The notes beneath the pieces were generated by a model. That model saw only the letters and a list, made by a program, of their open reading frames with translations, was not told the origin of the DNA and searched no databases. From the NCBI GenBank assembly GCA_029953675.1, contig JAMWBK010000003.1, positions 434,001 to 498,000 on the forward strand: DNA of 64,000 bases, in the 5' to 3' direction. The DNA is from Rhodosorus marinus CCMP1338. Its lineage: Eukaryota; Plantae; Rhodophyta. This document shows, one piece after another, positions 15,348-38,730 of this stretch (position 1 is its first letter; each line of letters begins with the position of its first letter). The position numbers were made by a program, and so were the translations under genes.

Positions 15348-16320
15348 TCTGCACCGACGCCAGCAACGGGGGGCACGTTCGTCGTCTGCACCGACGCCAG
15401 CAACAGGGGGGCAGGTGCTGACGACGAAACGTCCTCTCGAAATCCGGATTGCGTAAAACTGGATCCTTCGATAGTTCCGCCCGTAACTTGTCGAATGCTT
15501 GCTGCTTCAATGCCCCCCATTGGAATTTACTATTCTTCTTCGTCAGTTCTGTTAGTGGTGACGCAATTAAGCTGAAATCTGGCACATAGTTCCATAAATA
15601 CCCCGTGAAGCCTAGGAATGCGTGGATGTCGTGCACATTCCCTGGGGTTTTCCACTTCAAAAGGGCGGCAAGTTTCGCCGGGTCTGGTCTGCGTACTCCA
15701 CTTCCCACGAGGTGACCCAGGTACTTCGTTCCTGGTACGCCAAATGCACATTTCGATTGTTTGCTGTACAATCTAGCCTCCCGTAATTTCGTGAACACGA
15801 TGTCGACATGTCTTCGGTGCGTCTCCAGGATCGGCATGTAAATCATGATTTCATCAAAGAAGATGGTCACAAAAACGCCCAACTCATCGAAGAAGAGTTG
15901 ATTCAGCAGTCTCGTAAAGCTGCCGGGGCATTTGTGAGGCCAAACGGCATCACAAGCCATTCATATAATCCGAACGGCGTTGTGAAAGCCGTCTTGGGAA
16001 AATCCTTTCCCTCCACTATGAGTTGCCAATAGCCGCTCCTTAAGTCGATGACGCTTAGGTATGAGGCGGTACCCAGCGCATCCAGGCAGTCATCAATCCT
16101 CGGAGGGCTCGTCTTATTCGGTATCGTCTGTTGATTTCGCCCACCGTAGTCGATACACAATCTTTTTCCGCCATCTTTCTTATCCACGAACAGACAGGGT
16201 GACGCGAATGGTGAGGAGCTAGGTCGAATCAGGTTTTTAGCTAATAGATCCTGCAGCTGCGACTTCAATTCCTGCTGATCCACCAGGCTCATCCTATAGG
16301 GTCGTCGCGACGTTGGTGTT
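15348..16320 (-). mobile_element. Ty3/gypsy reverse transcriptase (inverted relative to gag-pro) with RNase H start; no integrase seen
   Basis: Motifs [57 protein letters not shown]. The YxDD motif is degenerate (FFDE) and there is a frameshift. RNase H start TFVVCTDASN sits at the junction. Confidence 0.9.
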
Positions 16321-17901: not shown

Positions 17902-20900
17902 CTAGTTAAGATAGCCTCGACAATTCTTCGACCTACACAGGCAAGAAATCTTCTCGTCGTCGTCCTCGAGCTCAAACTTGTAGTCGTATGTGATTTCCTC
18001 CCCGGGCGCGAGCCTTCGTTTGCTGTAAAACACAATCTTCGGTTCCTTTTGCACCTCAATGATGCGCGCATCGACGTTGGGTTCACAGCTGTGGTTGATA
18101 TATCGGGACAGTGCACCGTTCCTTGTAGCATCCACGACGGCTTCCTCGCTCACCCGGAACATGTACGAATCGCCCATTCCCAATCGCTGATACATCCTTT
18201 CCCTCGAGTCGGCGACACTGTTCCTGACGAGTTCGCCTATATACTCCACAACATACTCGCCGGCCTCGATAGACTCAACCGCGTAAAGGCCAAGACCGTG
18301 AATTCTCGACTTGCCAGCCCTGAGGTTCTTCCTCTGCGTCTTCAGAGAAAGCTTGCTCAACAGAGAGGATACTTCACAGTGGAGTCCGGCGTTCCTGCGT
18401 AGGCCTCTCACCGCCCCTCTCTTCCAAGTCTGGTGGGCAGAGTCTTTTATCTCGATCGAAGGTAGGTCTTCCACTACAGATGACTTCATCAAGGGATCCA
18501 CCTTACGATAAGGCTCCGTGCGAGCGCAACCGCTTGGGTTCTCAATAAGAGGCTCCTCTCGCGGCCCCTCAGCATCCGAAGCGGAATCCTCGGCTTCCTC
18601 GCTGCTCACTCCCTCAGAAACCTCGGACACAGCCTCCTTCAGCTCCGGAGACAACCTCTTTCTCAGTCTAGACGAAATATCTTCGCCAGTGGGGACGCCC
18701 TCGACGATCAGCTCCTCCGTGATAGAACCAGACGTCTCATCATCGTCGCTTCCCTGCGGCTTCTTCCGCTTGTACCTCGAGCGCCGTGCTTCTCGCGGGA
18801 GGTGAGTTTTTCCAACCGGAATCTCCCTTCGCTCAGCAGTTCCTTCCTTGCCTGGGATTCCCTTCTCAATGCGTTGCACCTCGGTCTGTTTTCCTTTCGC
18901 ATCTCCCGGCTGCTGCGCGTCGACATCGCCCTTCTTAAGCGCGTACTGGAAGCCTAGCTTTGGCAGGGTATTCAGCATGGCCGAAAGCGATGAAGTCCTA
19001 ACTCGAGATCGCTCATTCTCAGTAACCGTCTTCGAAACGCAGTTGACAGCCTCATTATCTACAATGTCACGAATTTCCTTGAAGACGGCTTCTTTCAGTA
19101 CACGCCTAGCCAGGCTGCAAGTATCTTCGAGCAGTTCTTCTTTGCTGATTGGTGGTCGGGTGACCTTTCCTAGCAGATACATCTCCTCCCCACGAGAAAT
19201 CTCGTAGGTGTGCATGAAAACTCCAAATCGACTCCCTCGGATCAGACGATCTTCATCGTCCGCTCCTCGTATTGATTTGTGGCAAAAGTCCCTCCTACCC
19301 TTGGACGTGAACACGACGATCCAGAACGGGCCGGTGCTCTGGACTTTGATACACCCATACTTCACGAAAAACAATTTCACGTCCACCTCCTTCACGTGTA
19401 CTGGAAGCATAGCCACTCGCAAGGCTGGTAGACTGGGAACGCGATTGTCCTCGCCGGCCGTGAGATTCCTCGCATGCTTCTGAGTACTCCCTTGATCCTC
19501 GTCCCCTAGCTTGCTGTGTAGTTGAGCTTCTTCCCGCTGTTTTCGCTGCTTTTCTTGCTCTTCCTTCATCTTTCGCTTCTTCTCCTCAGCTTGTTCAATC
19601 TGTTTCTGTCTCTCAGCGGCCTTTTCAAGCTCTATAGTTTTCCTACGCTCTTCGTCCTCTTGTAAGCGCTTCACCCGGGCTGCCTCCTCGTCCTCGTCAC
19701 GCTTTCGTAGTCGTTCAAGCTCAACATTTGCTTTCTTAAACAAAGGATCAACTTCAATCTCAAGTGAGCGGCCGAGGAACTTCCTCCCACGGAAGGCTTT
19801 CAACGCAACCTCTGATTCGCGCCTGGAGCAAAACCTGACATGCGCTATGCCGGCATGTGCTCCTTTGTGTCGATAGACTTTGACCTCGGCAACCTTGCCG
19901 TAGTTTGAGAACTCCTGCTGAAGGAACCTCTCGGTGACATTGTTGTTCAAATTCGACAGGAGTAAGACGCGCTCGTCATCAGTAGGATCGTTTTCGTCCC
20001 TCCCATAACGCGGGAGCACGCCAAGAAGTTTCCTCACGGGGCCCGACGCTCTTTCTCGCGGGTCAGCCAATGGAAGCCAAGAGTTCGAGCCCTGAGCTGG
20101 CACTCCGACATCAACGTATCCCCGAACACTGTATTTCCGGATACCTTTCTGCGAATCCGAGCCTATTCCTACGAAGCGCCAATCGTCCCCTCGCAGCGTG
20201 CTTAAACAGGCCACAGCTTCACCGGTGGAGAGCTCTCCCAGGATACGCTTGAGAGCCACAACGCTGCTCTCCCTCGTATCCTGCGTACCAGGTACTTCTT
20301 CTTCAATATCCATGTCATCACTATCGTCATGCTCATCCCCCGCCAGTTTGTGCGGCTCAGGAGGGCCAGGAGGGCCCATGTATATGTTCACTTCGTTTGC
20401 TGCAGTAGCAGAAACCAGTTCAGGCTTTCCCGGGACCGCGTCGATCTGAAATCTAGCCTGTGCGAATACGGTACTCCCCGAAGCCTTTGGTTCCTTGATT
20501 GTGGCTATGAGCGTCGTCATCCCAGGCCCTTTCTCCTGGGAGGTCTCAGCGACTTCGCTCTGTGCTTGGACGCCGCTGGCCTGTATCTCATTCTGCTTTG
20601 TCTGACGCGCCATCTCTGAGAACGGATTCGTCGTCCTCCGCGGCTTGCTGCTGTCACGCCCCCGAATCATTCCCATTCGAACTGGCTGGTGGTCACGGCT
20701 AAGCACGTTCTTCCCGATTCCCGTGGCCTCGAGTCGCTTCGATGGGTTTTGAACTGTAACCCCTCTTTCGGGTTCCATGCCGTTGAGCTGTCCGCTAAAG
20801 GCAAAGTAAGAGGGCTGATCATTCCTGCCCTCAGCATCATCGCGGGGTGCAAGCTCGGCTTCTGTTGAGTTCAGAGAATCCTGGAAGCCGTTTGGTGCAG

Positions 20901-22203
20901 GCCTCTTCTCCTGAACGCCCATTTTCTCCGGTAGGCGGCTCTCTTCGTTAATATCAGCCCCTCTCGGAGATGATAACGCGACGTACTCGCTTCTACCGTG
21001 GCTGTCTGCATTCTCGAACACGTTATTGGAGGACTTTGACATCACAGCCTCCGTGTCACTACCAAAATGCGAAGATGACGTGGGGGGGGACGGTTTCTCC
21101 AATTTTTCTCGTTCTGTCTCCTGAGCATCCACTGCAGGTTCTTGCTTTTGTTCCACATGACTCATATTAGTCTTCGCGACCTGCGCGAAAGAGGCGCTTT
21201 CCGCAGCGGAGTGATCGTTCGAGGGAGCGCTGAGTCGTGAGTTTCCTTCCCCGCGCTCGACAGCCACCTGTTCACGCGCGGGCTCGATGCAGGGGCTGGT
21301 CAACCTTCCCGGATTTTCGCTCTTCCGCTCAGGTTGAGGACTACGACTCCGGCTCCGACTTAAGCTTCTGCTCCTGCTTCTACTCACACTTCGGCTGATA
21401 CTCCGACTCCTACTTCGGCTCCTACTCCGACTTCTACTCCGACTTCTACTCCGACTTGTACTCCGGCTTTTGCTTCGACTTAAGCTCCGACTTACGCTTC
21501 GAACCCGGCGGAGAATACTCCTTCGATTCCCACTCCGGCTGTTGCTCCGACCTCTACTTCGACTCCTGCTCCGGCTCCTGGCGGCGGTTCTACCCAGAAT
21601 TCCTGCGCTCTCCCTCCAATCATTTCCCGCCGGGCCTGCATTCAATCGGCGTGTTGGTGGTCGAATGGGAGACCGGCTTCGACTGCGGCTGCGACTTCGG
21701 TTTCGCCTGAACCGGACAGGACTAGGAGGGATGTTCGGATTCCTTGTCCTTGGAGGCACGAAACCCCTTCCAAGAGGGGCAGCCTGTGGCGCGCTGTGTC
21801 TATGTCCATGGAGTTGCGCATTCCTCGCAGTCTGTATTCGTACACGAGCTCCTGGGGCAGGAGGAAGTTTGATGGTGTTGCGTCCGACCATCATCACGTT
21901 CCCTGGAGGTGGAACTGGACGCGTAAACCTTCGGATAGGTTTGGCAATCGGATTTCTCCTGTTATCCCTAATATCCCTCTGGCCCCCCCAACCTCTCCTT
22001 AACGGTACGTGGGGATCGAAGGGACGGTGATATCGTGGACCTGGCCTAGGCTGCCCTGTCGAAAGCACCTCACGCCGCGGGTTGAAGGTGGGCCTCGGGT
22101 TCCCGAGAGCCTTCCGATCAGCAACGACCTCTCCGTCTTCGACGATTTCACCGTCATCATTTCGACGCTCATTTACAGCCCTCGGTGCCGCCCGGGGGTC
22201 CAT
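17902..22203 (-). CDS. SET1: SET1/COMPASS histone H3K4 methyltransferase, 1,433 aa, intronless
   Basis: SET domain GKSRIHGLGLYA..EYIGE..RYINHSCEPN..EEITYDY, post-SET CLCRSKNCRGYLN, WIN-like GCARTE, RRM (LLLSNL..GIAHVRF), N-terminal RS-rich tract. Confidence 0.92.
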   Translation of the reverse strand: MDPRAAPRAVNERRNDDGEIVEDGEVVADRKALGNPRPTFNPRREVLSTGQPRPGPRYHRPFDPHVPLRRGWGGQRDIRDNRRNPIAKPIRRFTRPVPPPGNVMMVGRNTIKLPPAPGARVRIQTARNAQLHGHRHSAPQAAPLGRGFVPPRTRNPNIPPSPVRFRRNRSRSRSRSRSPIRPPTRRLNAGPAGNDWRESAGILGRTAARSRSRSRSRGRSNSRSGNRRSILRRVRSVSRSLSRSKSRSTSRSRSRSRSRSRSRSRSRSISRSVSRSRSRSLSRSRSRSPQPERKSENPGRLTSPCIEPAREQVAVERGEGNSRLSAPSNDHSAAESASFAQVAKTNMSHVEQKQEPAVDAQETEREKLEKPSPPTSSSHFGSDTEAVMSKSSNNVFENADSHGRSEYVALSSPRGADINEESRLPEKMGVQEKRPAPNGFQDSLNSTEAELAPRDDAEGRNDQPSYFAFSGQLNGMEPERGVTVQNPSKRLEATGIGKNVLSRDHQPVRMGMIRGRDSSKPRRTTNPFSEMARQTKQNEIQASGVQAQSEVAETSQEKGPGMTTLIATIKEPKASGSTVFAQARFQIDAVPGKPELVSATAANEVNIYMGPPGPPEPHKLAGDEHDDSDDMDIEEEVPGTQDTRESSVVALKRILGELSTGEAVACLSTLRGDDWRFVGIGSDSQKGIRKYSVRGYVDVGVPAQGSNSWLPLADPRERASGPVRKLLGVLPRYGRDENDPTDDERVLLLSNLNNNVTERFLQQEFSNYGKVAEVKVYRHKGAHAGIAHVRFCSRRESEVALKAFRGRKFLGRSLEIEVDPLFKKANVELERLRKRDEDEEAARVKRLQEDEERRKTIELEKAAERQKQIEQAEEKKRKMKEEQEKQRKQREEAQLHSKLGDEDQGSTQKHARNLTAGEDNRVPSLPALRVAMLPVHVKEVDVKLFFVKYGCIKVQSTGPFWIVVFTSKGRRDFCHKSIRGADDEDRLIRGSRFGVFMHTYEISRGEEMYLLGKVTRPPISKEELLEDTCSLARRVLKEAVFKEIRDIVDNEAVNCVSKTVTENERSRVRTSSLSAMLNTLPKLGFQYALKKGDVDAQQPGDAKGKQTEVQRIEKGIPGKEGTAERREIPVGKTHLPREARRSRYKRKKPQGSDDDETSGSITEELIVEGVPTGEDISSRLRKRLSPELKEAVSEVSEGVSSEEAEDSASDAEGPREEPLIENPSGCARTEPYRKVDPLMKSSVVEDLPSIEIKDSAHQTWKRGAVRGLRRNAGLHCEVSSLLSKLSLKTQRKNLRAGKSRIHGLGLYAVESIEAGEYVVEYIGELVRNSVADSRERMYQRLGMGDSYMFRVSEEAVVDATRNGALSRYINHSCEPNVDARIIEVQKEPKIVFYSKRRLAPGEEITYDYKFELEDDDEKISCLCRSKNCRGYLN

Positions 22204-23771: not shown

Positions 23772-24250
23772 ATTTACTGGAAGTGGGTTTCTAGAGCCTA
23801 TCCTCCCGGTTTCGCCATAGAAGGGCAGCCTGATGCGTAGTTGTTCAGGGCGAGCATGGATCTGAACTTAGAATGTTCCTCGAACCGGTAGGTGCTCCAC
23901 GGTCTTCTCTAGCGCGCGCTCATCAATCGCGCCAGTGAATCCCATAGTCAGTAGACTGCATTTCGACTGAGAGCGGGTGACGTAGCCTTGTACGGTCTTT
24001 GGAATCGGAATGCTGAAAAAATGCTCCTGTACATGCCCTTGTACATATCTGAGTACAGATCCACTTTGGCTGATGAAACAAGTGTTCGTTGACAAACAGA
24101 ATTGGGATCGATGTAACAGGTTAAGACGAACTCGAAGCGGCAGAGTGTGTCTGATCAACGAACTCGTATGACGAAGTCTTATTTGGACTGTTGTTTCGCT
24201 TTAATTACATAGAGCACACGTGGTGTATAAAATTTTTTGACTTTGGCGTA

Positions 24251-27200
24251 CTAAGTCCACTTAAGGGAATAATAACGATCGTGAACTTCAAGGGTATCCG
24301 AGTCGCTCACAATTTCAACTCTACGATTTGTACCGATTTCCCAGGAGTAGTTGGTTGCATTCCTGCGGACGTATTTGTACTCGATCCGCATGCCCCTTGG
24401 TAGAGACACTTGGCAATAGTGCCTATCTGGTCGATCGGATTGAAGCGGGCACCCCTGCTTTGCGGACCACTCACCTAGAACTTTGTCACCACCAACAATG
24501 ACAAAGCTCTTCGGTACAGGGTTCTTCTCCTTCTCCTTGGCCGAATGAACAACGGAGTCGAGAACAAAGGTCACCCTGACCATGTCGGAAAGTCTATAGT
24601 GCGGTTCGCTGACCACCTTTGAAAGATCGTCAACTACTCCGACATCATCCGGAATAGCAGAAACGTCGTACCCAGCCTTAATCGCCACCGCCAGCTTCTG
24701 ACAGACAGCCCTGTACTTCTTCACGTACTGATGGCATTCAGCCCTTGTCTGCTGTACAAGCGACATCTGGCGGTCAACCTCGTGCGAGAGAATATCAACC
24801 TCCCTCTTCGAGTCCGACTTGATGGACTCTACAATCGCGTCAGTTTGCGACTGCGACTCCGCAAGCTCCTTAGACATCCTCTCCAAAGCAGTCTCGAGTT
24901 CCTTCACCCGCGGAACGATTGGCCTCATCTTCTGGCAGAGGGTTCTCCACTTCACTTCCGACTGTGTGAGCTTTTCCAAGTCAGATTCGGCCCTCGTGAG
25001 CTTGGCTGCTGTTGCATCCTTCTGGCGCTGAAGTTCGTGAACTTCAATTCGCGATCCGCTGTTCAACGTTTCCTTGTCAGATTCAAGCTCAACCATTCTT
25101 GCCTTGACTCTAATAAGTTCATTGTCTTTTCGGAGCTGCGATTCCTGGAGTTCCAAAATTTCTTGCTTGGCGTTCTCGTAAGAGAGCGCAACTGAGTCCA
25201 GCCTCGTCCGTATATCTGCCAGTCGCGTATCCCGCTCGCGAACGCTTCCTTTCGCAGCTTCGAGTTCATCTCTTAGGGCGCCAGTCTCCTTGTCTTGCAT
25301 CAACTCCTTAGCCTCTGTCCTCGACTGTTCGAGCATTTCCTCCAGAGCACGAGTCTTGCTCTTCATACTAGACACTTGATCTATTCGCTCAGCCTCAGAC
25401 GTGCGAATCAGGCGATCCTTTTCCTCGAGACTGGTAGTAAGGTTTTCAACAATGTTTTGCAGCTTCTTACTAGAATTAGATGCACTTTCAAGCTGCTGTT
25501 GCTTCTCAGCGAGCATCTTCTCCGTTTCATGTAGCTTCTGGTTGACGAATTTGCTGTACCTCTGCAGCTGGGATACCGATTCCTCCTTTGCTTCAACCTT
25601 TTCTTGAAGCACCTTGATGCTGGAAGTTTCCGCACGCATCCGGGTCTGCTCAGCCGCGATTCGGTTGTTTACCGAAGTCAGCTCATCCTCAGCTGTCTTC
25701 AACAAGAGCTGCGTAGTGTTGAGCTCCACCTTCAGCCTTGCGATCGTGCTCTCCGCATCCTCGATATGGGCACGCTGCTCAGCCTTCTTGGAGTAGGCTT
25801 CCTCCAATGTTCCCTGCACCTTCTCAAGTTTTTCTTTATACAATTCGAGCTCTCCTCTAAGAAAGGCAACCAACTGCCGCTCTTTGTTGAAGTAGCTCTC
25901 AACCTCCTGCAGTCGCCTGTTACTCTTCTCGAGATCGTCAGTCTTTGCAAATAGCATACTTCGGTACTCCTTGTCAGATTGATCCATCGCGGTCTCGGTT
26001 GCATAGATTGCGCCTTCCGCCTCCTTATACTTGGCTTCGAGCTCAGAGAGTTCCGATTCCCGATCGATGAGTTTAAGTGACAGCTCCTCCTCTCTGCGCT
26101 TGTGGTGAGCAGTCTCTTCCTCTTGCGTTACGAGCTTCTCCTGCAAGTCGGCCAATTTGGCCACAGCATCTCCGATCTCCAGTCGTTGCTGCGCGATGGC
26201 TTTCTCCGAGGATTCAAGTTTGATTCGGAGTTCCTGTGCGTCGACCGCATGCTTCCCAAGACGCTTGATTTGGTCCTGTTTGTCGACAACCGATTTCTGC
26301 GCAAGAATAAGCTCTTCCCGCAAAGTTCGACTCTCGGTCTCAACCTTCGACAGGTAAGAGCCTCGTTCTGAGAACTCCTTTTCCAAGCCCTTCAACCTCG
26401 TGAGCGTGTTTGTATGTTCTCCTTCCTTTTCAGTGTTTGCCTCCTCGAGGAGTCTTAAGAGCTCCGTCTTTCTCGCGACGGTGCTCTCTGAAGTAGCCAG
26501 CTTTTGAGTGAGCAGCTCCAACTTCTCGCGCTGGGCTTTCGCTTCAACCTGCGCCTCCTCTCGAGCAAATACCTCCTGTTCATGCTTAGCTTCCATATCC
26601 GCTAGTTTGGCTTCTATCTCCATGACGACGTGCTGAGCGTGCTTCAGTTCCTTATCTGTTAGTTCCAAGTGATTTTCCTTTGCCGCAAGCTCCGCTTGAA
26701 GCTTGTCTTTCACCGCAGAAAGCTCTCGCACGGATCTACTCTCAGCAGTTAACCCTACGTCCTTCTTTCGCAAAACACTCTGAGCCTGGTCCAAGCTTGC
26801 CAGTGACTCCGTGAGTTTCAGCTCAGTGTCACTTAGTCGCTTGCTTGACCCGTGGATCTCATTATCCTTCCACGCTAGTAAGGCTTGCCCGCTGTTAATC
26901 TCCGCTCGTGCTGCCTTCAGTGCCTCACGATCTTTCTCAGCTTCCGTACTCCATTTGCGTACATCAGCCTCGAGAGACTTCCGTTTCGATTCGAGGGCAG
27001 CTATGGTATGCGCCTGAGACTCGCGTTCTTGATCCACAAGGTTCAATTTTTCATTGCAATCTCGCAGCTCCCACCTGTACGCTTCCACTTCCTCAGTGAG
27101 TTCCATCACACGCCTTCGCGCAATGCTCGAGTGTTCTTCGAGGGCCCTTTGGCGAACAGCGGCGACCTCTCCAGCCGCTCTCAATTGATCCTCAGTATGT

Positions 27201-30200
27201 TTCAGGGCCGACCCTGCGTGTTCAGCACGCCTTGTAGCTTCTTCAGCGAGAGTATCCCGCCTCTCCTTAGTTTCAAGAGTCTCATTGAGCCTTTCCTCAA
27301 CACCGCTAACCATTTCACGGGATCTCTCCAAACTCTCACTTAGCACGACCAGCTCTCTATGCAACTCATTGTTTCTCGTTGTCAGCTTATTCATTTCATC
27401 GAGCCTGGAAGCCGAGACAAGCTTCTCAGCTGCGAGCCGCTCATGCAATGATTCTAATGTAGTATCTTTCCATCTCAGCTTTCCCTTTTGCTCCTCGACA
27501 ACTGCCTCCAATCTGTGAGCTTGGGCGCTCCTCTTAGCAAGATCTGATTCCTGGTCAGCACTTCTACGCTCAGCTGCGGACAATGCCTTCCTTGTTCTGA
27601 CTAGCTCATTAGATACCCTTTCCATGCTCGTTGTCAGGTCTGCGACGCTGGCCTTACTTCGCGTACTTTCCTCCTTGTATCTTTCAATACCGACCTCCAT
27701 GGAGGACTTCTTCTGCCTCAATTCATCCCTCTCCGCGACTAGTTGATCCAGAGACCGTGTCTTGTTTGCAAGTTCCCTCTTGCCGGACTCCTGAAGATTT
27801 TCAGCTTGGTTCACTCTCTGTTCCATGGATTTCATCGAAGACGCAAGCGCTTCGAATTTGTTTCTCTGCTCAGCAAGCGCGTGCTCTGTCTCCTTGATAA
27901 GCTGCAGGTTTTCCTTCCCCTGCTTCTGCAGCTGCTCTTCGCTCGCTTGAAGCAAGGCAAGTGCTTCCACCTTGCTCTCCAGCATTTCGCGCAGGCGACG
28001 AACCTCTGCCGATTTCTCGTCTACAGATGCTTGCAGCAACGCAACTCTGGTGCTTGTTTGCGCATGTTCTTGCTCACCATCCCCATCACCGAAAGCTCTG
28101 ACCACCGAGAGTTCCTTGCGTAGCCGGGCAACTTCCTCTGTCAAACTTGCATTCTTGGCTGTGGATTCTCGCATACTTTCCAGGCTCTTCTGCTTCACGC
28201 GAATGTAAGACTGGGCTTGGGCAACCTCCGCTTTTGACTCTGCGTAAAGAGCCTTTGACTTTTCATGCTCTTCACGTTCCTCCTTAAGCTCATTAAGGGC
28301 TGCTTTGAGCCTTTCTCCTGTTTCAGCTGCTGTAGTCTCCGCGCTTAGCAACTGCTCTCGGAGCTTGTCGCTAGAGTTGACCCGTTTGACCTTTGATGGG
28401 CTATAATTGTTAGGCAAGTCTCGAAGGCTTTCCCGAAACATAACTAGCGCAGCCAGCCCCTCCTTTTGACCTGAAACCAGATTATGAGCCTTTGCTGTAT
28501 CCTGCCACCCGCTGTTTTCCCGCTCAACCTCTTCTAGTCGTCTCTTCAAAGCATCTACCTCCCGCACCAGGGCGGCGTCTTTTGGTACATCACTCGCTGG
28601 CCCGGAGTTTGGATCCGACTTTGACCGCAACTCACGGAGTTCCTCCTTTAACGCCTTATTTTCGGAACGCTCTACCGCAAGGTCTGCCACGAGGGTGGTC
28701 ATATCCGAAACCCACTTCTCCTCGGTATGGCCTGAGAGTCCATTCTTGGGACGATTTTTCTCTAGGGCAATCACCGACTGATGCAGTCTAAGGATCTCCT
28801 CTTCGGCTGACTTCTTCACTTCAGCAATGCCGCTTTCCAGCGTTCTGCTGTTCAGGAGCTCCGCTTCCAGTTGCTTCTCTTTCGATAGGAGTGCCTCCCG
28901 GGCTGCGTTAAGTTGCTCGGAGATCTTGGCAACCTCGGCACTTGCGATTGCAGAATTGTGCTTTGCGTTTCGATCGGCTATGTCCTTCTTTGCGATTTCA
29001 ACCAATTTCTCTTTCCGTGCTAGCTCAGTCTCCTGCATCGCAAGTCGCTTATGAGCAGCGCTGAGCTCTGCCTCTGTCTCACCAAGTCTATTCTTGACAG
29101 CAGCCAGGTCTCTTCTTGCCTGTACAGTATCTGCAGCTTGTTTCTTCGCAGCATCTAGCTCGCTAAGAATTTGGTCCTTTTCCGTGAAAAGAGAGCGGAC
29201 CCTGGTCATTTCTTCTGCTAGTGATTTCTATACGAAGGAGGGAACAAGAAGAAAGCACAAGTATTAGCTATTGTGAGAGCGTTAATTCTCATGAACGTCC
29301 AGGACGCATGTCATGGAGCTTGCATACCTTCAGCGAGGCGGACGTGAGTTCCAGAGCCGTTCTCAGCTTAACCTCTCCGCTGAGTTGCACCTGTCTCATT
29401 TCTTCCAAGGAGCTTAGCTCTTCTTCCCGAATCGCTAGTAAACGGTCACTCCTATTTGATGAAGAGGATTGTAAACGCATTCAGACACGAAAATTCAGAT
29501 GGGCTGATCCACCCAATGCCCGTTGCGCTTTGTTTTCAGCATTGTACACACCTTTGAATTTTCCTCTCCGCAGCGTTCGCACGCTTCGTTACAGAAGCCA
29601 ACGCGCTTTGCATGAGCTTCTCCCTCAGCCCAAGGCGAATTGCCGGAAATCCGAGCTCAGAGAGGGACGAATCAATAGTATTTAGAGAGTTGCAGCCAGT
29701 CAAGTCCAGTCGCTCTAGAGACTTCAACGTGACCAAAGCGACTGGAATCTCCTGCAGTTTGCCGTTATCGTGGAGATCCAGATTTTTTAATGTGCGAAAC
29801 TGCAGAACTGCGTCTTCCTCAATCTTCATGAGCACATTTGAGCTGAGGTCCACACTCTCGAGACCATTTGCTACGGACTCGTGGATGTCGCCATCGTTCA
29901 AAGCCTCAATCTTGTTCCTCGAGAGCACAAGATTTTGTAGCGGCGGGCCAGCAGAAATCCGGGCCCGGGAAATACTGTTGCCGCTCAGGTAAAGCTGACC
30001 AAGAGACAGCAAGCTTGATACATGTAACTCAGTCAAGCGATTCTCCTGTGCGCTCAATATCTGCAACTGACGCTGCCCGTCACCAAGTACAATCTCCGCA
30101 ATCTTGTTTCTGTCAACATTGAGGTCGATGAGTGACTCCGGAAGCTCGCAGTTGGAATTTAAACTCTCGAGACAGTTGTTCTGAATGCTCAAGAACTCGA

Positions 30201-30903
30201 CCGTCGTCGGAATAGAGTTTCTAGACAAGGTCCGCAGTCGGTTACCGTCAAGATTTAGCTTCTTCAACTTTGGAAAGTTCCATACGTCCTGGGGAACCCT
30301 TTCCAGCAGGTTTGCTGATAAATCAATCTCATTAACCTTGCTCTTTTTCTTGAACTTCGAAAAGCTCTCCTCCGCTTCATCATCGTTTAGGCCGAGGTTG
30401 CTCCCATCCAACACCGTGCCTCTCAGCACAAATTCTGTTCGGCGAACATTGTCCTCCGGCAAAATCTCCTGAGAGGGTGTCTCTGTCGGGTGCATGTTTT
30501 CCTCCGGCAAACTCTCCTGAGAAGGTGTCTCTGTCGGGTGCACATGTTCCTTCGGCAAACTTCCCTGAGAAGGTGTCTCTGTCGGGCGCATGTTTTCCTC
30601 CGGCAAACTCTCCTGAGCAGGTGTCTCTGTCGGGTGCGCATTTTCCTCCGGCAAACTATCCCGAGCAGGTGTATCGGTTGGGTTCGCAGTTTCCTCCATT
30701 AGTCTCTCTCGAGCAGGCAATTCTGCTTGGCCCACATTTTCCTCCATTAATCTCTCTCGCGCAGGTAACTCCGTTGCGCTCAAGTTTTCCTCCATTAGCC
30801 TATCTCGAGCAAGTAACTCTGTTCGGCCACTACCTCCCACCGCCGAACGCGCCTGGGCACGTTCGGGCTCGTTCGCCTCCTCCATGCCTTTCTCCTCACA
30901 CAT
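24251..30903 (-). CDS. Giant protein: 16-aa repeats + LRR domain + long coiled coil + C-terminal CBM20 starch-binding domain, 2,150 aa
   Basis: Exons 30903-29552, 29451-29328, 29227-24251; two 100-nt GT-AG introns keep the frame. LRR units such as IDLSANLLERVP and LNLDGNRLRTL. CBM20 signature VTF..G..LGEW..EYKY..WEIGTNR. Confidence 0.85.
30439..30822 (-). repeat. Coding tandem repeat, 8 x 48 bp (16 aa, e.g. TETPSQESLPEENMHP)
   Basis: Visible in both the DNA and the translation. Confidence 0.9.
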
Positions 30904-32949
30904 CAATCGTATTTACACAGTACTAATAATTTCCAACTCTGCCCCCAAAAGCAAGCAACCCCCTACCCACACACCGCTAAGTCATCCCCTCGAGTCTGCT
31001 TTCAAACCCACCACATCTAAAAACGAAACCCTAATCTCCAGATTTCCACTACTACATTCTCGAGGCCCTTCTTTTCCCTCACTACTCAGAATTCAGCAAA
31101 ACCAAACTACAGAAGATGAAATTTCAATTCTTATATACACCCCCTTCGACTCCTACAGAACAACATACCAGGTCCTTCCTCCCCCTCGCACCCATCCCTC
31201 CCACCGAAAATCCCATGTCATACGAAATCCTGTCAACCAGCCAAACCTCAATTCCATGCCAGTTAAACCAGAGGCCCCTTTTGCCTTTCCGCGTCTCAGA
31301 TTTGGCAATACAATAAACCCCTCCATTGTTTAGCTGGAGATTGGCAATATTATTAACACAAAACCCGTATTATCCATTCTACTCGATCTAGTAAAGGGGT
31401 ACGAGAAAAGGGTTCTTGTTAGTATCAGTCCTCATGGAGAACTACCGAGAGATACTACGTGATACTAATGTGTCATAAATATCTTATTATACTGTCATAA
31501 TAATTAGAACTATATTATACGTATTTTACAAATTTTATTACTAGTTATGTTCAAATAATACTTCTGTCGCTTTAATTAATTTTCTAATGACACTAAAAAA
31601 CGCGCTCCGGGATTTTTCGGGTGATTTTAAAAACCACTGTCCAATACCCTTCCGCCACTACTTTCTGAATAAAAGTAATTTTACATCAATAAATCGTTCT
31701 TTCGTCTTCCAATCGACGTCTATTGGGTCACCACCCGTCCTTTTCCTTTCCTTTTTTTTTCGTAGCAACGGGTTAAGTCAAGTCTTGGTTTTTACTTATT
31801 TAGGCCCACCTTTTGGATGATTCCACACGCATGGGTGAAAAAAAACCCGACTTTTCGTATACTCCTCAAAAATTGATTGGATATTGACTTACAGCTTTTA
31901 TCTGCCTTTCTCACCCACAAACCCAAAATACTTGATAAATTATCGAAACTTAAGTAAATGAAGAGGTGGGTATTCGGTGTAACCACAACGGGTGTTTTGG
32001 CATTGGGAAATCGAAAAAAAAACTATGATCTCCTTGTCTTCTTCTTATTGGTCAAATACGATATAAGAAAATTCTTAAAAACAATAATATTGCGAAAAGC
32101 GTTTAATAGAAATAAATTAAAAGGAAATGATAAGCGCGTGTCGATTTCCATTCGTCAAAAAAAGGCCTAACATCACTTAACAAAAAGCGTAGGCGTTTTT
32201 TTGGTAGGGGTAGGGTAGTCATACCCGGAAAGACTAAAAGATGGTTTTTATGTTTTGATTTGTTTTGGTACTGGTATTGGGAGAGGGAGCGAGAAACAAT
32301 CAAGGGGGGTGGGGTGTATTGGATGTATTGGATTCTGAGAATTGGTTCAAGTTTTACTGGATTCGGTCTTCGTCGAAAGGGGGGGAAGGATTGGTGGAGA
32401 CCGTCAGAGATTAGTGAGGAGGGTGGGGGGAAACTAGTAGTAGTAGCACACGTCATTGTTTCATTCGTTTGTAGGGGAAATTTCGACCGTTCCCTGAGAC
32501 AGATGTTGTAAAGCCAAAACAACGTGCGGAGGATCTGGTAAAAAAATTCGATGATGCAACCGTTGTTTTCACCGGGTTCAATATTTTCGTAAGGTGGCTG
32601 GCTGTGGTGGTTGAGGAGTCCTTGGGACTCGAGAGATGGTCACACAAGCTTAATTTTGATCCGTTTCTGGATTTTCTTCCTTTTGACCATGTTGCCGTTA
32701 TTATAACTATTTTTGAATCCGAGCGAGTTGCAGGGAATTGTGTGCCTCTGGCACGAAAGGTGTATTGATTCATGATTCATCCTTGGGTTTGTCGGAATTC
32801 AAACGAGGACTCTGCTTTTGGTTTGTAACGTTGGAGGTTCTTCCTCTTGCCTCGCCGCCCTCGCACGTAACATGACTGTTTTGGAAGGGGGAAGGGAAGG
32901 GTGACCCTACCGTGAAATTGCAGAAATTTGTGTCTCTCTGGAAAGTTGT

Positions 32950-34906: not shown

Positions 34907-37900
34907 TCATCGCGAGGATAGCTTCTTCTGTGCACTGATCAGAATGGTTTGTATTTCGTCTAGGAACTGACTGTTTCGCGTCTTTGTTGCCAATTCAATC
35001 GCTTCTTTCCCTAGACCGCATTGAGCGAGAGCTCTTGCCCGGTCGTGAGGATTCTATATTTGCTCGGAATCGAACACATTGAAGTTAGCTCGACAGCCTC
35101 TTGAGACCGAAACCGGCTTTCGAATTGGGCTTTTGCAAAGCCTACCTTGACCATTCTCGCATATGCAGCCGCCTCTTCAAAGTTCTTTCGACTCAGACAT
35201 GCCCTAACGAATGGCATGTATCCAGTCGCGGGGTTGTTTCCAGTAATCTTCAGCAAGTCTCGAATGCCTGCGAAATCGTCTTCTCCAGCAAGCGCATCCA
35301 CGCAAATAAAGATGAACCGCTGATCCTCGATCTGATAAGATTCCACAAAGAGTCATTCAGCAACCGGGTGCGTTTCCATACTTAAAGGAATCTGTACCTG
35401 AAGTTCCCTTTTCAGCCACTTTAAGACGCCCGTCCTGGTCGCCGAGCTTTGAGAGACGATAGCAGCGACTCTTAGAAGATCGCTGCTGGAAAAGTCCTGA
35501 ATCGTGCCGCTTGGGAACGACAACTTTCGCTCCAGATCTGCACCGACCAAGGCGACATTCGCCAAGTCAACGATAACTCCAGCTTCGAACTCGCACTGTT
35601 GCTTATAGCCGGGTTTGTTGCGAATTGAGGAAGCAAGGTTTCGTAGACTACTTGCACGCCGTCCAACTGAATCGTCACTCAATCTTCTTTCGAGTTCCGC
35701 CATAACTGCTTCGGAATAATGCCCGGTTTCCTCATATAGAATCAACCGCGCGCTGTGGTCTCCGGAGCGCCTTAACAGCGTGCTTAGAGATGCTACTGCC
35801 TGGGAACAACCAACCGGATCCATTCGCTCCTTGATGGTGCGCGAAATAGATCGGATTGTCTGATTCTGACGGAGGTTTTCAAGGACGTCCCAAACAAGCT
35901 CAAGATCGTTGCTAGCGACAGCGTCTGCTAACGCGGCTGGTCCAAGATCGAGTTCCATGAGAATCGGTACCTGAAAGGAAAAAAGAGGAGAGGAGGGTGA
36001 GGAAGGCACTAAAAACTGATGCACGATAAGGTTGACCAAGGGATTGACAGCCGTACCCTTCGAGCAGGGTCCTGCTCCTTTGAGATCAGAAGCTTGGCCA
36101 GACTAAGTCTACCTTTTCGCATCGCCACGTGGGATGCATCAACGTAGGGCGGGGTAAAGTGTGGAAACCGCGCAGCTATCTTTTCGAATTGTTCAATGCA
36201 CTTCGACGCAACGGCAGTCTCGCCGTCACGATCCTTCTCGATGAGCCGCTTTGCCCATCTGGTGATGACCTCTTCGGGGTCTGAGGCGTACCGTGGAACG
36301 GAAAGTAGAGTAGGGTCAATCAGAGTCCGAAACATCCGGGACGCGGTGGCTCACCGACGCAGTCTACGAAGATGTTGTGATAATTTTGAAAACTCACTGA
36401 TTTCGCAAAACGAAGCGATGCGAAAGGCGAGGTTGTCATCACCAAAGGCGGATACTCGATCAACCAAGGCAGCAGCACCGAGCTCGATAAACTCAGCTGC
36501 AGTTATCAGTACCGTTGGAGTACCGCTTCTTACTGAGTTGAGCACTCTCAGCGTCGTCGCTGTTCTTGGGAAGAGATTAGAATCCCGCAATGCCGTCGAA
36601 CCCTCACTTGGCTCTTGCGTGTAGCCGGCCTCTTCCTGAAACGCATCCGCATACGCAAATCCGTAACTTGCAGACCTCAGCAGTCCTTGCTGCTTTCGAA
36701 TCGTCCATTCGTGCCTAGCTGCAGCCAGGCATGTTTCGGCCGAGTTCACAATCGTGTTATCTTCCATGAGCAATTCTATGGCTGAGTGACGCTGCATGGC
36801 CTTCAAGAATCGAGAGTCGGGCGGCTGATCCGACGCGTCCACCTCAACGCTGTTGAACAATAAGGCAGATCCGTGCGTACTTCCCACTGCGAATACTCTC
36901 TCGGTATCCTTCGATACAAGTTCCACAAAGTCTACTGAACCAATACTCAATAGGCGCAGACCATCGCTTTCTGTGGCCAGTCGGGTGGAACTGGAAACGG
37001 TCCAGGTGGCATGCTCCCCTTTCGGACCGAAGACAACCAAAGTAGTACCGTAAACGGCGCTAACAGCGTCGTTTCCACACCAGGAGAGTTGATCCGGCTC
37101 CTGACGACTGCGGCTAGCCGACAAGTCGAACGGGGCTTTCCATTGCAGGACAATTCTTGGTCCGGATTTGGTAATCACGAGGATCGTGCCATTTGCTAAG
37201 GCTCCAGTCAGCAGCTCTCCATTGGGGGAGAGCGAGATATGGGATATACTCTCGCTAAGGTCGAGGACCCTGGGTTTCAACCAGCCCGGCGAAAGGACGA
37301 CGAAGCAGGATCCAGCGCAGCTGAGGAAGATTTCCAGTTGGTTCTCGTCTAGATCGGCTGCGGCAATTGTGGATGAAGCTTGATACACCCGCCTGGGCGG
37401 AAGGAACGACTCCGCTACGGATAGAGGTCTGGAGTTCAACTTGCCGTTTCGATACGAAACAGACCACAGGTTTCCTTTCACTCCGCGGAGGACAATCTGT
37501 CCCTTTCGTGTGATAGCTGCGTCAAAGATCTCCTCCTGCGCCTCGAGGGAGGCCGTATCGAGGATGTGCCCTTCGATGTTGAACTTGGTGACTCTCCCAT
37601 TCGACTGAACGACCAAGAGCGCGTCACGTTCGTCCCATCCAAGAGTCAACACTCTGTTGACTCCGGTTCCTAGCTGCATGGACCCTTCCGCGGATAGTAA
37701 CCGACCAGAGGGCGTACAAATCTCTATTCCCAGGCCAATGCTCCATCCAAACCCTCCACATAGAGCAATTGGCCCCGCACACCTGGCAACCCCTAGTATA
37801 CAGCCCTTCCATTCATCAATCACCTTACGCGGCCACTCCGCGTGCTTACAAAGGCTCAGCTTTCGATAGTTGCGATCCTCAACCTGGCACCAACGTATCC

Positions 37901-37928
37901 ATTCCTCCTCGTTATCCTCTTCATCCAT
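34907..37928 (-). CDS. VPS16: HOPS/CORVET subunit Vps16
   Basis: N-terminal W..VEDRNYRK..ARCAGPIAL, QLSWCGNDAV, C-terminal helical region (PYVDASHVAM..LAKLLI; FVRACL). Last exon spliced as NPHDRARALAQCG...KKLSSR*. Alternative ATG at 37985. Confidence 0.85.
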
Positions 37929-38730
37929 CCTGAGCACTCCCGACTTGCTTACATCAGAACAAAGCCTAGAAAGGCAGCATTCCATCCTTCATTCGATGAA
38001 GAGGACATAAACTTGGTCTTGCCATCGTCTTAAAGGAAAACATGTGGTGATGCTTCTCCGGTCCTGTTTTACGCATATAAGAACAGATCCTTCTCTCCCA
38101 ACGTATCCATCGAGAAGATCGCAATCCTCTGGCTGTGAACAACTAATTCGGAGGTGGGTCCGTAGGCGCATTTTGAAGACGGGCCGATGAGCTTTTGAGC
38201 TGTTCCCGGGGCCTTAAGCAGATGTCTCTCAGTTAGAAACGGCTGGAGGAGGGAATAGTTCTCGCTGTCTCCATCGACAATATCCCGGCTTTGGTTGTAC
38301 GTGTGTTCAAAATGGGACAAATACGACTGGGATCGGCCATTTTAGTTTGGACTCAAGACAGACATGGGTCAGTGCAGGACAGACCTTCTCGAAAAGGCTC
38401 GTCTTTGCATCCTTTCGACAAAGACGTTGAAGAAGACACACAAGACATGGGAGACTTCGCTTTTTTAGAGATTTGGTTGTAAGAAAGCTCGCAACTCAAA
38501 AACCTTGAGTTTTATAACGAAACTATTGAAGAAGGCGCAAAAGGGTGTTTCAAATATAATTAGATAGCAAATGGACTGGAAGATTGTTTTATGAAAAGAA
38601 TTAGATCCAGACATAGAAATTGAATTTAGAAGTAACTTGTTAAGAAAATTCTGCATTTGACAAGTATCCTGCATTGCTCCTGAGAGCGTGTTATAGGTCA
38701 AGCATAAGCTTCAGTAGCCCGTTCAAGATT

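What the first reader, a model, noticed from the sequence alone, without database searches (positions are those of the whole stretch)
24251..30903. 2,150-aa LRR + coiled-coil + CBM20 protein: candidate starch-granule tether or scaffold
Seen: the listed LRR ORF (29536-30906) and coiled-coil ORF (24251-29209) join via a 124-nt exon and two 100-nt GT-AG introns, all in frame. The last ~100 aa carry the CBM20 signature; no catalytic domain or transit peptide is apparent. Established: non-catalytic coiled-coil + carbohydrate-binding proteins organise starch (plant PTST with CBM48, Chlamydomonas SAGA1 with CBM20), and floridean starch is cytosolic. Inference: a long rod linking starch granules, through CBM20, to a partner bound by the LRR. 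I do not recognise this domain combination.
Basis: partly seen in the sequence, partly recalled or inferred. Interest (0 to 1): 0.8.

Follow-up and report, generated by a model that had tools for sequence, protein, structure and literature searches.

The report
Giant starch-binding rod protein, Rhodosorus
This is a real, expressed gene of the red alga Rhodosorus marinus for a 243-kDa non-enzymatic protein with a protein-binding LRR head, a long helical rod and a starch-binding CBM20 tail, which makes it the first candidate organiser of cytosolic (floridean) starch in a red alga, although its function is untested.

Summary
Two 100-nt GT-AG introns join the two ORFs through a 124-nt exon into one 2,150-codon frame. 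A Rhodosorus marinus transcriptome peptide (MMETSP0011, 2,205 aa) carries exactly the predicted junction peptides. Pfam confirms LRRs and a C-terminal CBM20 (47 bits, cut-off 23) and finds no catalytic domain. An AlphaFold model of the tail matches solved CBM20 domains, and all five residues of glucan-binding site 1 are conserved; site 2 is degenerate. The 1,575-aa middle is Pro-poor, predicted helical and has significant heptad periodicity. Against a second strain, dN/dS is 0.125 and residues 151-2150 align without a gap. There is no transmembrane segment, signal peptide or transit-like N-terminus.

The gene is already in GenBank as a hypothetical protein (KAJ8906396.1). That model adds a 67-aa tail through an intron whose donor lies in the stop codon, and this tail is probably an artefact. 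An exhaustive HMMER search of 1.84 billion proteins found no other protein matching beyond the CBM20 core, and none of its 59 CBM20 relatives matches this LRR.

Most likely it is a cytosolic starch-binding scaffold, analogous but not homologous to SAGA1/2 and PTST. It may hold the starch sheath over the Rhodosorus pyrenoid; that reading is speculative.

The parts
24251..30903 (-). Whole coding span of the gene. The start is ATG 30903, or ATG 30885 as used by GenBank and the transcript. The stop is TAG 24253-24251. The product is 2,150 aa (2,144 aa from the second ATG), 242.6 kDa, pI 5.5.
29552..30903 (-). Exon 1: acidic N-terminus, tandem repeat, LRR domain and the start of the rod.
   Evidence: junction peptide present in transcript peptide P0001
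29452..29551 (-). Intron 1, 100 nt, GT...AG.
29328..29451 (-). Exon 2, 124 nt; begins with the last base of a split codon, followed by 41 whole codons.
29228..29327 (-). Intron 2, 100 nt, GT...AG. It is 98 nt, still GT...AG, in the second strain, where contig L001 retains it.
24251..29227 (-). Exon 3: most of the rod, the linker, the CBM20 and the stop codon.
30431..30827 (-). Acidic Pro/Thr/Glu-rich tandem repeat: 48-nt (16-aa) units, about 8 copies, presumably disordered. The other strain carries 7-aa NPTDAPG units here instead. All indels between the two strains fall in this region.
29656..30384 (-). LRR domain, aa ~174-416: N-cap helix and about 10 repeats of 21-26 aa.
   Evidence: Pfam LRR_8/LRR_4; AF2 pLDDT 80-95 with 10 regularly spaced strands; Foldseek hits to SDS22, SHOC2, LRRTM2 and NgR2; PDB sequence hits to LRRD1, SHOC2 and LGR4
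24659..29646 (-). Helical rod, aa ~420-2015 (the span includes both introns), with short breaks at aa ~652, 698-707 and 872-876.
   Evidence: composition and Pro count; heptad a/d occupancy far above shuffles; AF2 long helices; dN/dS 0.09-0.17 and no indels
24254..24583 (-). CBM20 starch-binding domain, aa 2041-2150. Site 1 residues are W2079, K2110, W2121, E2122 and N2126. H2095 sits at the position of the site-2 Trp. A 9-aa insertion after strand 1 is absent from the other CBM20 sequences in alignment A1.
23868..24250 (-). Probably NOT part of the gene. In GenBank model KAJ8906396.1 this is a 'terminal intron' (24070-24251, donor inside the stop codon) plus a 67-aa extra exon (23868-24069).
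   Evidence: structure of the extension; the second strain has TAA|AATTC, so no GT donor, while the stop is conserved; codon-usage score is below every true-CDS chunk.

Best explanation
The gene encodes a cytosolic, non-catalytic scaffold of about 243 kDa.

Proposed mechanism:
- The C-terminal CBM20 uses its intact canonical site 1 (two Trp plus Lys/Glu/Asn) to bind alpha-1,4-glucan helices on floridean starch granules or on malto-oligosaccharide primers.
- The ~1,600-residue alpha-helical, heptad-periodic rod most likely pairs with a second chain. A parallel dimer would present two CBM20s, giving avidity on a granule surface, and would set a fixed spacing of up to ~230 nm if fully extended.
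- The N-terminal 10-repeat LRR solenoid binds a protein partner, and an acidic disordered repeat precedes it.
- The protein therefore connects starch to something else in the cytosol: it positions or shapes granules, or recruits a partner to them.

Shown: gene structure, expression, the domains, conservation of site 1, purifying selection and a strictly conserved length.

Inferred: glucan binding, dimerisation, cytosolic location and the existence and identity of the LRR partner.
For: - Gene and transcript: the splice model is exact, and its junction peptides are present in an independent transcriptome peptide.
- CBM20: Pfam 47 bits against a cut-off of 23.3. The AF2 model has pLDDT 87.6 and a Foldseek TM-score of 0.70-0.79 to isolated CBM20 domains of STBD1 (8x8k) and glucoamylase (1kul).
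- Binding site: in the HMMER alignment to A. niger glucoamylase SBD 1ac0, W543, K578, W590, E591 and N595 align to identical residues. The Trp, Lys, Trp and Asn positions are among the most conserved columns of a 36-sequence CBM20 alignment. The CBM20 is the most constrained part of the protein (dN/dS 0.058, 95-96% aa identity).
- Rod: E/K/R/L/A-rich with 8 Pro in 1,575 aa. Best heptad a/d occupancy is 5.18/8 against 4.40 +/- 0.07 in shuffles. AF2 gives helices of up to 104 residues. dN/dS is 0.09-0.17, and there is no indel in aa 151-2150 at dS ~0.3.
- LRR: Pfam hits and a confident solenoid model.
- No enzyme domain, no TM segment and an acidic N-terminus.
- Precedent: coiled-coil plus CBM proteins do this job in plastids. 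SAGA1/2 CBM20s bind starch and maltoheptaose and localise the sheath, and PTST2 works with MFP1.
Against: - No experiment bears on binding, localisation or partners.
- There is a single CBM20, and site 2 is degenerate (His at the W563 position, the Y556 position falls in a gap), so affinity of a monomer could be low.
- The N-terminal 15 positions of the Pfam profile are unmatched, and a 9-aa insertion follows strand 1.
- Rod confidence in AF2 is modest (pLDDT 40-85) and the oligomeric state is unknown. An antiparallel or folded-back rod would bring the LRR and the CBM20 together rather than apart.
- The protein was detected only in Rhodosorus, so a general red-algal role is excluded or the sequence diverges too fast to trace.
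- A ~230-nm rod is much longer than the gap expected between a granule and an adjacent membrane.
Confidence: 0.6

Rival explanations
1. Pyrenoid-cap tether (a specific version of the main reading). The protein holds the cytosolic floridean-starch sheath against the chloroplast envelope where the Rhodosorus pyrenoid bulges into the cytoplasm. The LRR would bind an outer-envelope protein. It would be a cytosolic functional analogue of SAGA1/2.
For: Reviews use Rhodosorus marinus as the example of a stalked pyrenoid with a cytoplasmic polysaccharide sheath. They state that no component is known outside one chlorarachniophyte. The protein was found only in Rhodosorus. In Chlamydomonas the sheath is localised by SAGA1/2, described as large CBM20-carrying scaffolds and as coiled-coil CBM-containing proteins.
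Against: There is no evidence of envelope binding. There is no membrane anchor. The rod is far longer than the envelope-starch gap. Sampling of other pyrenoid-bearing red algae is too thin to correlate presence with a sheath. No CO2-response data are available.
Confidence: 0.15
2. Granule-initiation or enzyme-recruiting factor, PTST2-like. The CBM20 binds malto-oligosaccharide primers, and the LRR or rod recruits a starch synthase or another starch enzyme, so that the protein controls granule number and size rather than position.
For: PTST2 and SAGA1/2 are coiled-coil CBM proteins that bind malto-oligosaccharides and are proposed initiators. Site 1 is intact. No catalytic domain is present.
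Against: There is no homology to PTST (which has CBM48) or to SAGA outside the CBM20. A 1,600-aa rod is unnecessary for simple recruitment. No partner is known.
Confidence: 0.15
3. Cytoskeleton- or division-linked LRR-coiled-coil protein, with the architecture of centriolin/LRRCC1. It would use the CBM20 to move or partition granules at cell division, or the CBM20 would be a secondary addition to a structural protein.
For: An N-terminal LRR followed by a very long coiled coil is, from my own knowledge and not tested here, the layout of centrosomal proteins such as centriolin and LRRCC1. The rod length is strictly conserved.
Against: No centriolin- or LRRCC1-like hit appeared in any search; the LRR hits are generic (SHOC2, LRRD1, Scribble, LGR4). 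From my own knowledge, red algae lack centrioles and flagella. The CBM20 is the most constrained domain.
Confidence: 0.07
4. Starch-targeting subunit of a phosphatase. An SDS22/SHOC2-like LRR binds the PP1 catalytic subunit and the CBM20 targets it to starch, analogous to the animal CBM21 glycogen-targeting subunits.
For: Foldseek places SDS22 and SHOC2, both PP1-binding LRR proteins, among the top structural matches. PP1 affects cytosolic amylopectin levels in Toxoplasma.
Against: LRR fold matches are generic, and designed LRRs and receptors score equally. The only RVxF-like motif is RVTF inside strand 1 of the CBM20, which is presumably buried. The long rod is unexplained.
Confidence: 0.04
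5. The CBM20 no longer binds starch, or binds another ligand, and the protein is a generic long coiled-coil tether or structural protein unrelated to starch.
For: Site 2 is degenerate, there is a lineage-specific insertion and the Pfam match is partial at the N-terminal end of the profile. There is only a single CBM copy.
Against: All five site-1 residues are conserved, the fold is confidently modelled and the domain has the lowest dN/dS in the protein.
Confidence: 0.09

Closest known systems
SAGA1 / SAGA2 (Chlamydomonas reinhardtii)
   Same: Large non-catalytic proteins that combine CBM20 with a very long alpha-helical or coiled-coil region plus a separate module for a second partner. Their CBM20s bind starch and maltoheptaose, and they localise starch to a defined place.
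   Different: - SAGA CBM20s are N-terminal (SAGA2 has two); here there is a single C-terminal CBM20.
- The second module in SAGA is a set of Rubisco-binding motifs; here it is an LRR domain.
- SAGA proteins act inside the chloroplast; this protein has no transit-like N-terminus, and red-algal starch is cytosolic.
- No sequence similarity was detected outside the CBM20 core.
PTST1/2/3 with MFP1 (land plants)
   Same: A non-enzymatic coiled-coil plus a carbohydrate-binding module, linking glucan to a protein partner or a membrane site.
   Different: PTSTs carry CBM48, not CBM20. They are much shorter (my own knowledge), plastidial and lack LRRs. No homology was detected.
STBD1 (genethonin-1, animals)
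   Same: Non-catalytic, with a single C-terminal CBM20. Its CBM20 structure (8x8k) is among the best structural matches (TM-score 0.76-0.79). From my own knowledge it tethers a cytosolic glucan (glycogen) to another cell structure.
   Different: STBD1 is small and, from my own knowledge, anchored by an N-terminal hydrophobic segment. This protein has no hydrophobic segment and has instead an LRR and a 1,600-aa rod.
Green-algal N-terminal 3xCBM20 + rod proteins (P0014 Chlamydomonas leiostraca, P0015 Haematococcus lacustris, P0023 metagenomic)
   Same: They are among the nearest CBM20 relatives found by exhaustive HMMER and combine CBM20 with a rod-like region.
   Different: They have three N-terminal CBM20s followed by a 300-400-aa rod and no LRR. 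Identity is only 28-33% and is confined to the CBM20 core.
Centriolin / LRRCC1-type LRR + long coiled-coil proteins
   Same: The order N-terminal LRR followed by a very long coiled coil (my own knowledge).
   Different: No sequence hit to them in any search. They have no CBM. They are centrosomal proteins of organisms with centrioles.

Membership tests
CBM20 (Pfam PF00686, CAZy family 20) | Profile match above the curated threshold | tested here: met
   47.4 bits against a gathering score of 23.3, E=1.7e-12, profile positions 16-93 of 97
CBM20 (Pfam PF00686, CAZy family 20) | Beta-sandwich fold superposable on solved CBM20 domains | tested here: met
   AF2 pLDDT 87.6 with 8 strands. Foldseek top hits are all CBM20: CGTases, glucoamylases, STBD1 8x8k, GPCPD1 2z0b, beta-amylase; probability 1.0; TM-score (target-normalised) 0.68-0.79 for isolated domains
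CBM20 (Pfam PF00686, CAZy family 20) | Binding site 1: two Trp plus Lys, Glu, Asn (A. niger W543, K578, W590, E591, N595) | tested here: met
   All five align to identical residues W2079, K2110, W2121, E2122, N2126. The Trp/Lys/Trp/Asn columns are >=90% conserved in A1
CBM20 (Pfam PF00686, CAZy family 20) | Binding site 2 aromatic residues (A. niger Y527, Y556, W563) | tested here: not met
   W563 aligns to H2095 and Y556 falls in a gap. Y527 lies outside the aligned stretch. From my own knowledge, site 2 is not universal in functional CBM20s.
CBM20 (Pfam PF00686, CAZy family 20) | Actual binding of starch or cyclodextrin | not testable with these tools
   Needs a pull-down or ITC with recombinant domain
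Leucine-rich repeat proteins | LRR profile matches and a curved solenoid of repeated beta-strand/loop units | tested here: met
   LRR_8 61.6 bits, LRR_4 52.9 bits, LRR_1 25.5 bits, all above cut-offs. AF2 shows 10 strands at 21-24-residue spacing with pLDDT 80-95. Foldseek finds LRR proteins only.
SAGA1/SAGA2 family | Sequence homology along the protein, not only in the CBM20 | tested here: not met
   The exhaustive HMMER search with the C-terminal 158 aa matched other proteins only over the CBM20 core (query 74-152). The full-length search returned no rod matches. SAGA1 itself was not fetched for a direct comparison.
SAGA1/SAGA2 family | N-terminal CBM20(s), Rubisco-binding motifs, chloroplast location | tested here: not met
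   The CBM20 is C-terminal. The N-terminus is acidic and not transit-like. Rubisco-binding motifs were not searched for; the green-type motif would not apply to a cytosolic red-algal protein.
PTST family | CBM48 plus a coiled coil | tested here: not met
   Pfam finds CBM_20 and no CBM_48
STBD1-like glycogen tethers | N-terminal hydrophobic membrane anchor plus a C-terminal CBM20 | tested here: not met
   A C-terminal CBM20 is present, but no hydrophobic segment exists anywhere (maximum 19-residue KD mean 1.03)
PP1 glycogen-targeting subunits (PPP1R3) | CBM21 plus an accessible RVxF motif | tested here: not met
   No CBM21 hit. The only RVxF-like match is RVTF within CBM20 strand 1.

The most novel reading that the evidence does not exclude
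The protein is the tether or organiser that keeps the cytosolic floridean-starch sheath wrapped over the bulging pyrenoid of Rhodosorus, across the chloroplast envelope from Rubisco. It would be an independently evolved, cytosolic counterpart of SAGA1/2. It would also be the first molecular component of a 'capping' polysaccharide sheath outside the green lineage and one chlorarachniophyte.
Probability: 0.15. Interest if true: 0.8.

Novelty: new variant of a known kind. Interest (0 to 1): 0.55.

Why it matters
How cytosolic starch is positioned is unknown in red algae. More broadly, it is unknown how algae with stalked pyrenoids assemble a polysaccharide cap on the cytoplasmic side of the envelope. 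A 2026 review says only one chlorarachniophyte has any molecular data and uses Rhodosorus marinus as its red-algal example.

A non-catalytic LRR-rod-CBM20 protein in that very organism gives a concrete, testable handle through granule proteomics, localisation and LRR interactors. If it proves to be a starch organiser, it would show that the 'long helical rod plus starch-binding module plus partner-binding module' design arose independently in the plastid (SAGA, PTST) and in the cytosol. If instead it is only a lineage-restricted structural protein, the finding is a modest annotation improvement.

Tried and rejected
- **Sub-query word-index searches.** The search for homologous proteins with the C-terminal 158 aa and with the LRR plus junction returned nothing or only generic LRR proteins at 25-27% identity. 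Neither returned the known orthologue P0001, so these negatives are weak. I rely on the exhaustive HMMER search instead.
- **Metagenome scan.** The scan with the C-terminal peptide found no relative.
- **PDB sequence search.** A search with 1,000 aa of the rod gave no hit, which is uninformative for a coiled coil.
- **Fourier periodicity.** Simple Fourier analysis in 84-aa windows was noisy. I replaced it with a heptad a/d occupancy test against shuffles.
- **PP1-targeting idea.** It arose from the SDS22/SHOC2 fold hits. I set it aside because the LRR matches are generic and the only RVxF-like motif lies inside a CBM20 strand.
- **GenBank C-terminal extension of 67 aa.** I rejected it as probably an annotation artefact, for three reasons. 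Its donor is the G of the stop codon plus a T. The second strain keeps the stop but has no GT there. Its codon-usage score is below every true-CDS chunk; that reference is compositionally biased, so the last test is weak.
- **Membrane anchor, signal or transit peptide.** None was found. No dedicated predictor was available.
Full report
**Observation**

On the minus strand, exon 1 ends ...AAATTCAAAG at 29552 and is followed by GTGTGT. A 100-nt intron ends ...AAATAG at 29452. A 124-nt exon (29451-29328) is followed by GTATGC, and a second 100-nt intron ends ...GTATAG at 29228. Exon 3 then starts at 29227. Joining the three pieces gives 6,456 nt with one terminal stop.

The first in-frame ATG is at 30903, with a TAA stop 9 nt upstream. 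A second ATG lies at 30885.

**Independent support for the gene model**

A full-length search returned one protein that covers the whole query: P0001. It is a 2,205-aa peptide from the MMETSP0011 transcriptome of Rhodosorus marinus, with 87% identity, 100% coverage and precomputed Pfam LRR plus CBM_20. It contains ...AAERKVRRSDRLLAIREEELSSLEEMRQVQLSGEVKLRTALELTSASLKKSLAEEMTRVRS..., which spans both predicted junctions residue for residue. So a spliced mRNA joining the LRR, rod and CBM20 parts exists in a related strain.

The cluster of P0001 also holds P0070, which is GenBank KAJ8906396.1, 'hypothetical protein NDN08_002889 [Rhodosorus marinus]' (UniRef A0AAV8UUZ4, 'CBM20 domain-containing protein'), on a 3.35-Mb contig. 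P0070 is identical to the window's model over 2,144 aa starting from ATG 30885. The window is therefore this published genome (Lee et al. 2023, PMC10250338). The gene is already deposited but uncharacterised, and no paper in the library mentions its identifiers.

**The 3' end**

P0070 carries 67 extra C-terminal residues. They arise from an 'intron' whose donor is TA|GTACGC, that is, the G of the TAG stop plus the next base. Its acceptor is at 24071-24070, and the added exon runs to 23868.

A 5,179-bp JGI contig from the other strain (L001, encoding P0071) is colinear with window 29360-24171 at 91% nucleotide identity. It reads ...TGGACC TAA AATTCA at this point. The stop codon is conserved there, but no GT donor exists.

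The codon-usage score of the extension is -0.14. It lies below all 66-codon chunks of the true CDS (mean 0.39 +/- 0.14, minimum -0.12) and is closer to intron/3' sequence (-0.34 to -0.46) than the CDS mean is.

L001 retains intron 2 (98 nt, GT...AG). I could not establish whether that JGI sample is RNA or DNA.

**Domains**

*LRR and CBM20 by profile.* Pfam finds LRR_8 (6e-17), LRR_4 (3.5e-14) and LRR_1 in the N-terminal part. It finds CBM_20 (1.7e-12; 47.4 bits against a cut-off of 23.3; profile positions 16-93 of 97) at the C-terminus, and nothing catalytic anywhere.

*CBM20 binding residues.* A PDB sequence search with the tail hits the A. niger glucoamylase starch-binding domain (1ac0, 4e-5) and many CGTases. 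In the printed alignment, the site-1 residues W543, K578, W590, E591 and N595 align to identical residues, here W2079, K2110, W2121, E2122 and N2126. The site-2 W563 aligns to His2095, and Y556 falls in a gap. In a 36-sequence alignment of the nearest CBM20 domains, the site-1 Trp/Lys/Trp/Asn positions are among the few columns conserved in at least 90% of sequences. The Rhodosorus proteins also have a private 9-residue insertion after strand 1.

*CBM20 fold.* AlphaFold2 on that alignment gives pLDDT 87.6 and pTM 0.77 with eight strands. Foldseek's top matches against the PDB are all CBM20 domains. They include human STBD1 with maltotetraose (8x8k, TM-score 0.76-0.79), glucoamylase 1kul (0.70) and GPCPD1 2z0b (0.68).

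*Rod.* The middle 1,575 residues contain 15% Glu, 12% Leu, 11% Ala and 9% each Lys and Arg, with 8 prolines in total. The best heptad a/d hydrophobic occupancy per 28-residue window averages 5.18 of 8, against 4.40 +/- 0.07 in 100 shuffles. Windows reaching at least 6/8 are 36.7% of the total, against 14.4 +/- 2.9% in shuffles (maximum 22.8%).

*LRR and rod fold.* AlphaFold2 of residues 150-900 shows a confident LRR solenoid (about aa 174-416, ten strands 21-24 residues apart, pLDDT 80-95). Helices of 104, 57, 60, 37, 21, 27, 95 and 23 residues follow, separated by short breaks, at lower confidence. Structural and sequence neighbours of the LRR are generic: designed LRRs, SDS22, SHOC2, LRRTM2, NgR2, LGR4 and LRRD1.

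*N-terminus and targeting.* The N-terminus carries a 48-nt (16-aa) acidic Pro/Thr-rich tandem repeat. There is no hydrophobic segment (maximum 19-residue KD mean 1.03). The first 40 residues have 9-10 acidic against 5-6 basic residues, unlike a transit or signal peptide. That last point is a heuristic, because no dedicated predictor was available.

**Selection**

I compared window and L001 over the 1,652 codons of exon 3. There are no indels, dS is 0.295, dN is 0.037 and dN/dS is 0.125. Rod segments give 0.09-0.17 and the CBM20 gives 0.058.

In a global alignment of the whole model with P0001, all 73 gap columns fall in three places: the alternative start, the N-terminal repeat (aa 77-136) and the last residue. 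Residues 151-2150 are gap-free. Identity is 88% in the LRR, 92% in the rod and 95% in the linker plus CBM20. In the repeat region the other strain has about 25 copies of a 7-aa NPTDAPG unit instead of the 16-aa units. The rod's length and sequence are thus under clear constraint, whereas the N-terminal repeat is free to change.

**Distribution**

An exhaustive HMMER scan of 1.84 billion representative proteins with the last 158 aa found 60 proteins at E<=1e-3. Only P0001 matched the region upstream of the CBM20. The other 59 matched the CBM20 core alone at 26-42% identity.

The best of these are multi-CBM20 proteins. They include a pedinophyte protein with five copies, and green-algal or metagenomic proteins with three N-terminal CBM20s followed by a 300-400-residue rod (P0014, P0015, P0023), which resemble SAGA-type layouts. 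None of the 59 gives any phmmer match to this LRR.

The full-length search gave only generic LRR hits besides P0001. Within the reach of these tools, the LRR-rod-CBM20 combination is confined to Rhodosorus. Two caveats apply. Stylonematophycean red algae are barely sampled. And two word-index searches failed to recover P0001 itself, so their negatives carry little weight.

**Interpretation**

Shown:
- a real, expressed, selectively constrained gene;
- a protein-binding LRR head;
- a very long helical, heptad-periodic rod;
- a structurally complete CBM20 with the canonical site 1.

Established by others:
- Red-algal starch is made in the cytosol, and starch associates with red-algal pyrenoids only where these bulge into the cytoplasm.
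- Non-catalytic coiled-coil CBM proteins organise starch in plastids.
- The SAGA1/2 CBM20s bind starch and maltoheptaose and localise the sheath, and PTST2 works with MFP1.

Inferred: the Rhodosorus protein binds floridean starch or its primers through the CBM20, probably dimerises through the rod, and links the glucan to a partner bound by the LRR. I put about 0.6 on this generic scaffold reading.

The more specific and more interesting reading concerns the pyrenoid. Rhodosorus marinus is the review example of a stalked pyrenoid with a cytoplasmic polysaccharide sheath whose assembly is molecularly unknown. The protein could hold that sheath in place. I give this about 0.15, because nothing here speaks to localisation and the rod (about 234 nm if fully extended) is long for a simple bridge.

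Alternatives are a granule-initiation or enzyme-recruiting factor, a cytoskeletal LRR-coiled-coil protein with an added CBM20, a phosphatase-targeting subunit, and a degenerate CBM20. They are listed with their tests in the rival explanations.

**Comparison and novelty**

It works like SAGA1/2, PTST and STBD1, but it is not a member of any of these families:
- The CBM20 is at the opposite end from SAGA.
- The second module is an LRR rather than Rubisco-binding motifs.
- There is no CBM48, unlike PTST.
- There is no membrane anchor, unlike STBD1.
- There is no homology outside the CBM20.

It is therefore a new variant of a known kind: a non-catalytic rod plus starch-binding module scaffold, in a new compartment and lineage, and already present in GenBank as a hypothetical protein.

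I set interest at 0.55. It is a good, testable candidate bearing on an explicitly open question, but every functional claim is still computational inference, and the protein is known from one genus only.

Noticed in passing
window 23868-24253 (-): GenBank model KAJ8906396.1 splices out of the stop codon (donor TA|GT at 24252/24251, acceptor at 24071-24070) and adds 67 aa. The donor is absent in the second strain, while the stop is conserved there. This is probably a gene-prediction artefact that should be corrected.
   Followed up: yes
window 30431-30827 (-); P0001 aa ~75-200: The N-terminal acidic repeat array is completely remodelled between the two strains: about 8 copies of a 16-aa PTETPSQESLPEENMH/ELPARERLMEEN unit here, against about 25 copies of a 7-aa NPTDAPG unit in MMETSP0011. 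The remaining 2,000 residues have no indel.
   Followed up: partly
window 24171-29360 versus L001: The genome strain and the MMETSP0011/JGI strain, both labelled Rhodosorus marinus, differ by 9% at the nucleotide level and by dS ~0.3 in this gene. That suggests species-level divergence within the named species.
   Followed up: partly
L001 1-150 (= window 29360-29210): JGI contig Ga0186320_100287 (sample 3300017118) retains intron 2, so its gene call starts at the internal ATG (1,652 aa). It is either an unspliced pre-mRNA or genomic DNA; the sample type was not established.
   Followed up: no
window 17902-22203 (-): The next gene downstream on the same strand is a 1,433-aa uninterrupted ORF with an RRM (aa 748-814) and a C-terminal SET domain (aa 1303-1409), a SET1-like histone methyltransferase layout.
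   Followed up: no
window 3895-4875 (-) and 6934-7752 (-): A thiolase ORF and an enoyl-CoA hydratase ORF lie about 2 kb apart on the same strand. These are two fatty-acid beta-oxidation-type enzymes as neighbours.
   Followed up: no
window 15277-15960 (-): A 227-aa ORF with a partial reverse-transcriptase (RVT_1) match, probably a retroelement remnant between genes.
   Followed up: no
window 36351-37985 (-) and 48749-49525 (-): A Vps16 N-terminal-domain ORF (544 aa), and an ORF fragment with DEAD_2/HBB domains (XPD-like helicase) that is presumably one exon of a split gene.
   Followed up: no
(tool behaviour): the search for homologous proteins did not return the 92-95% identical orthologue P0001 for two sub-queries, although it found it with the full-length query. 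Negative results from this tool with short queries should not be trusted.
   Followed up: partly
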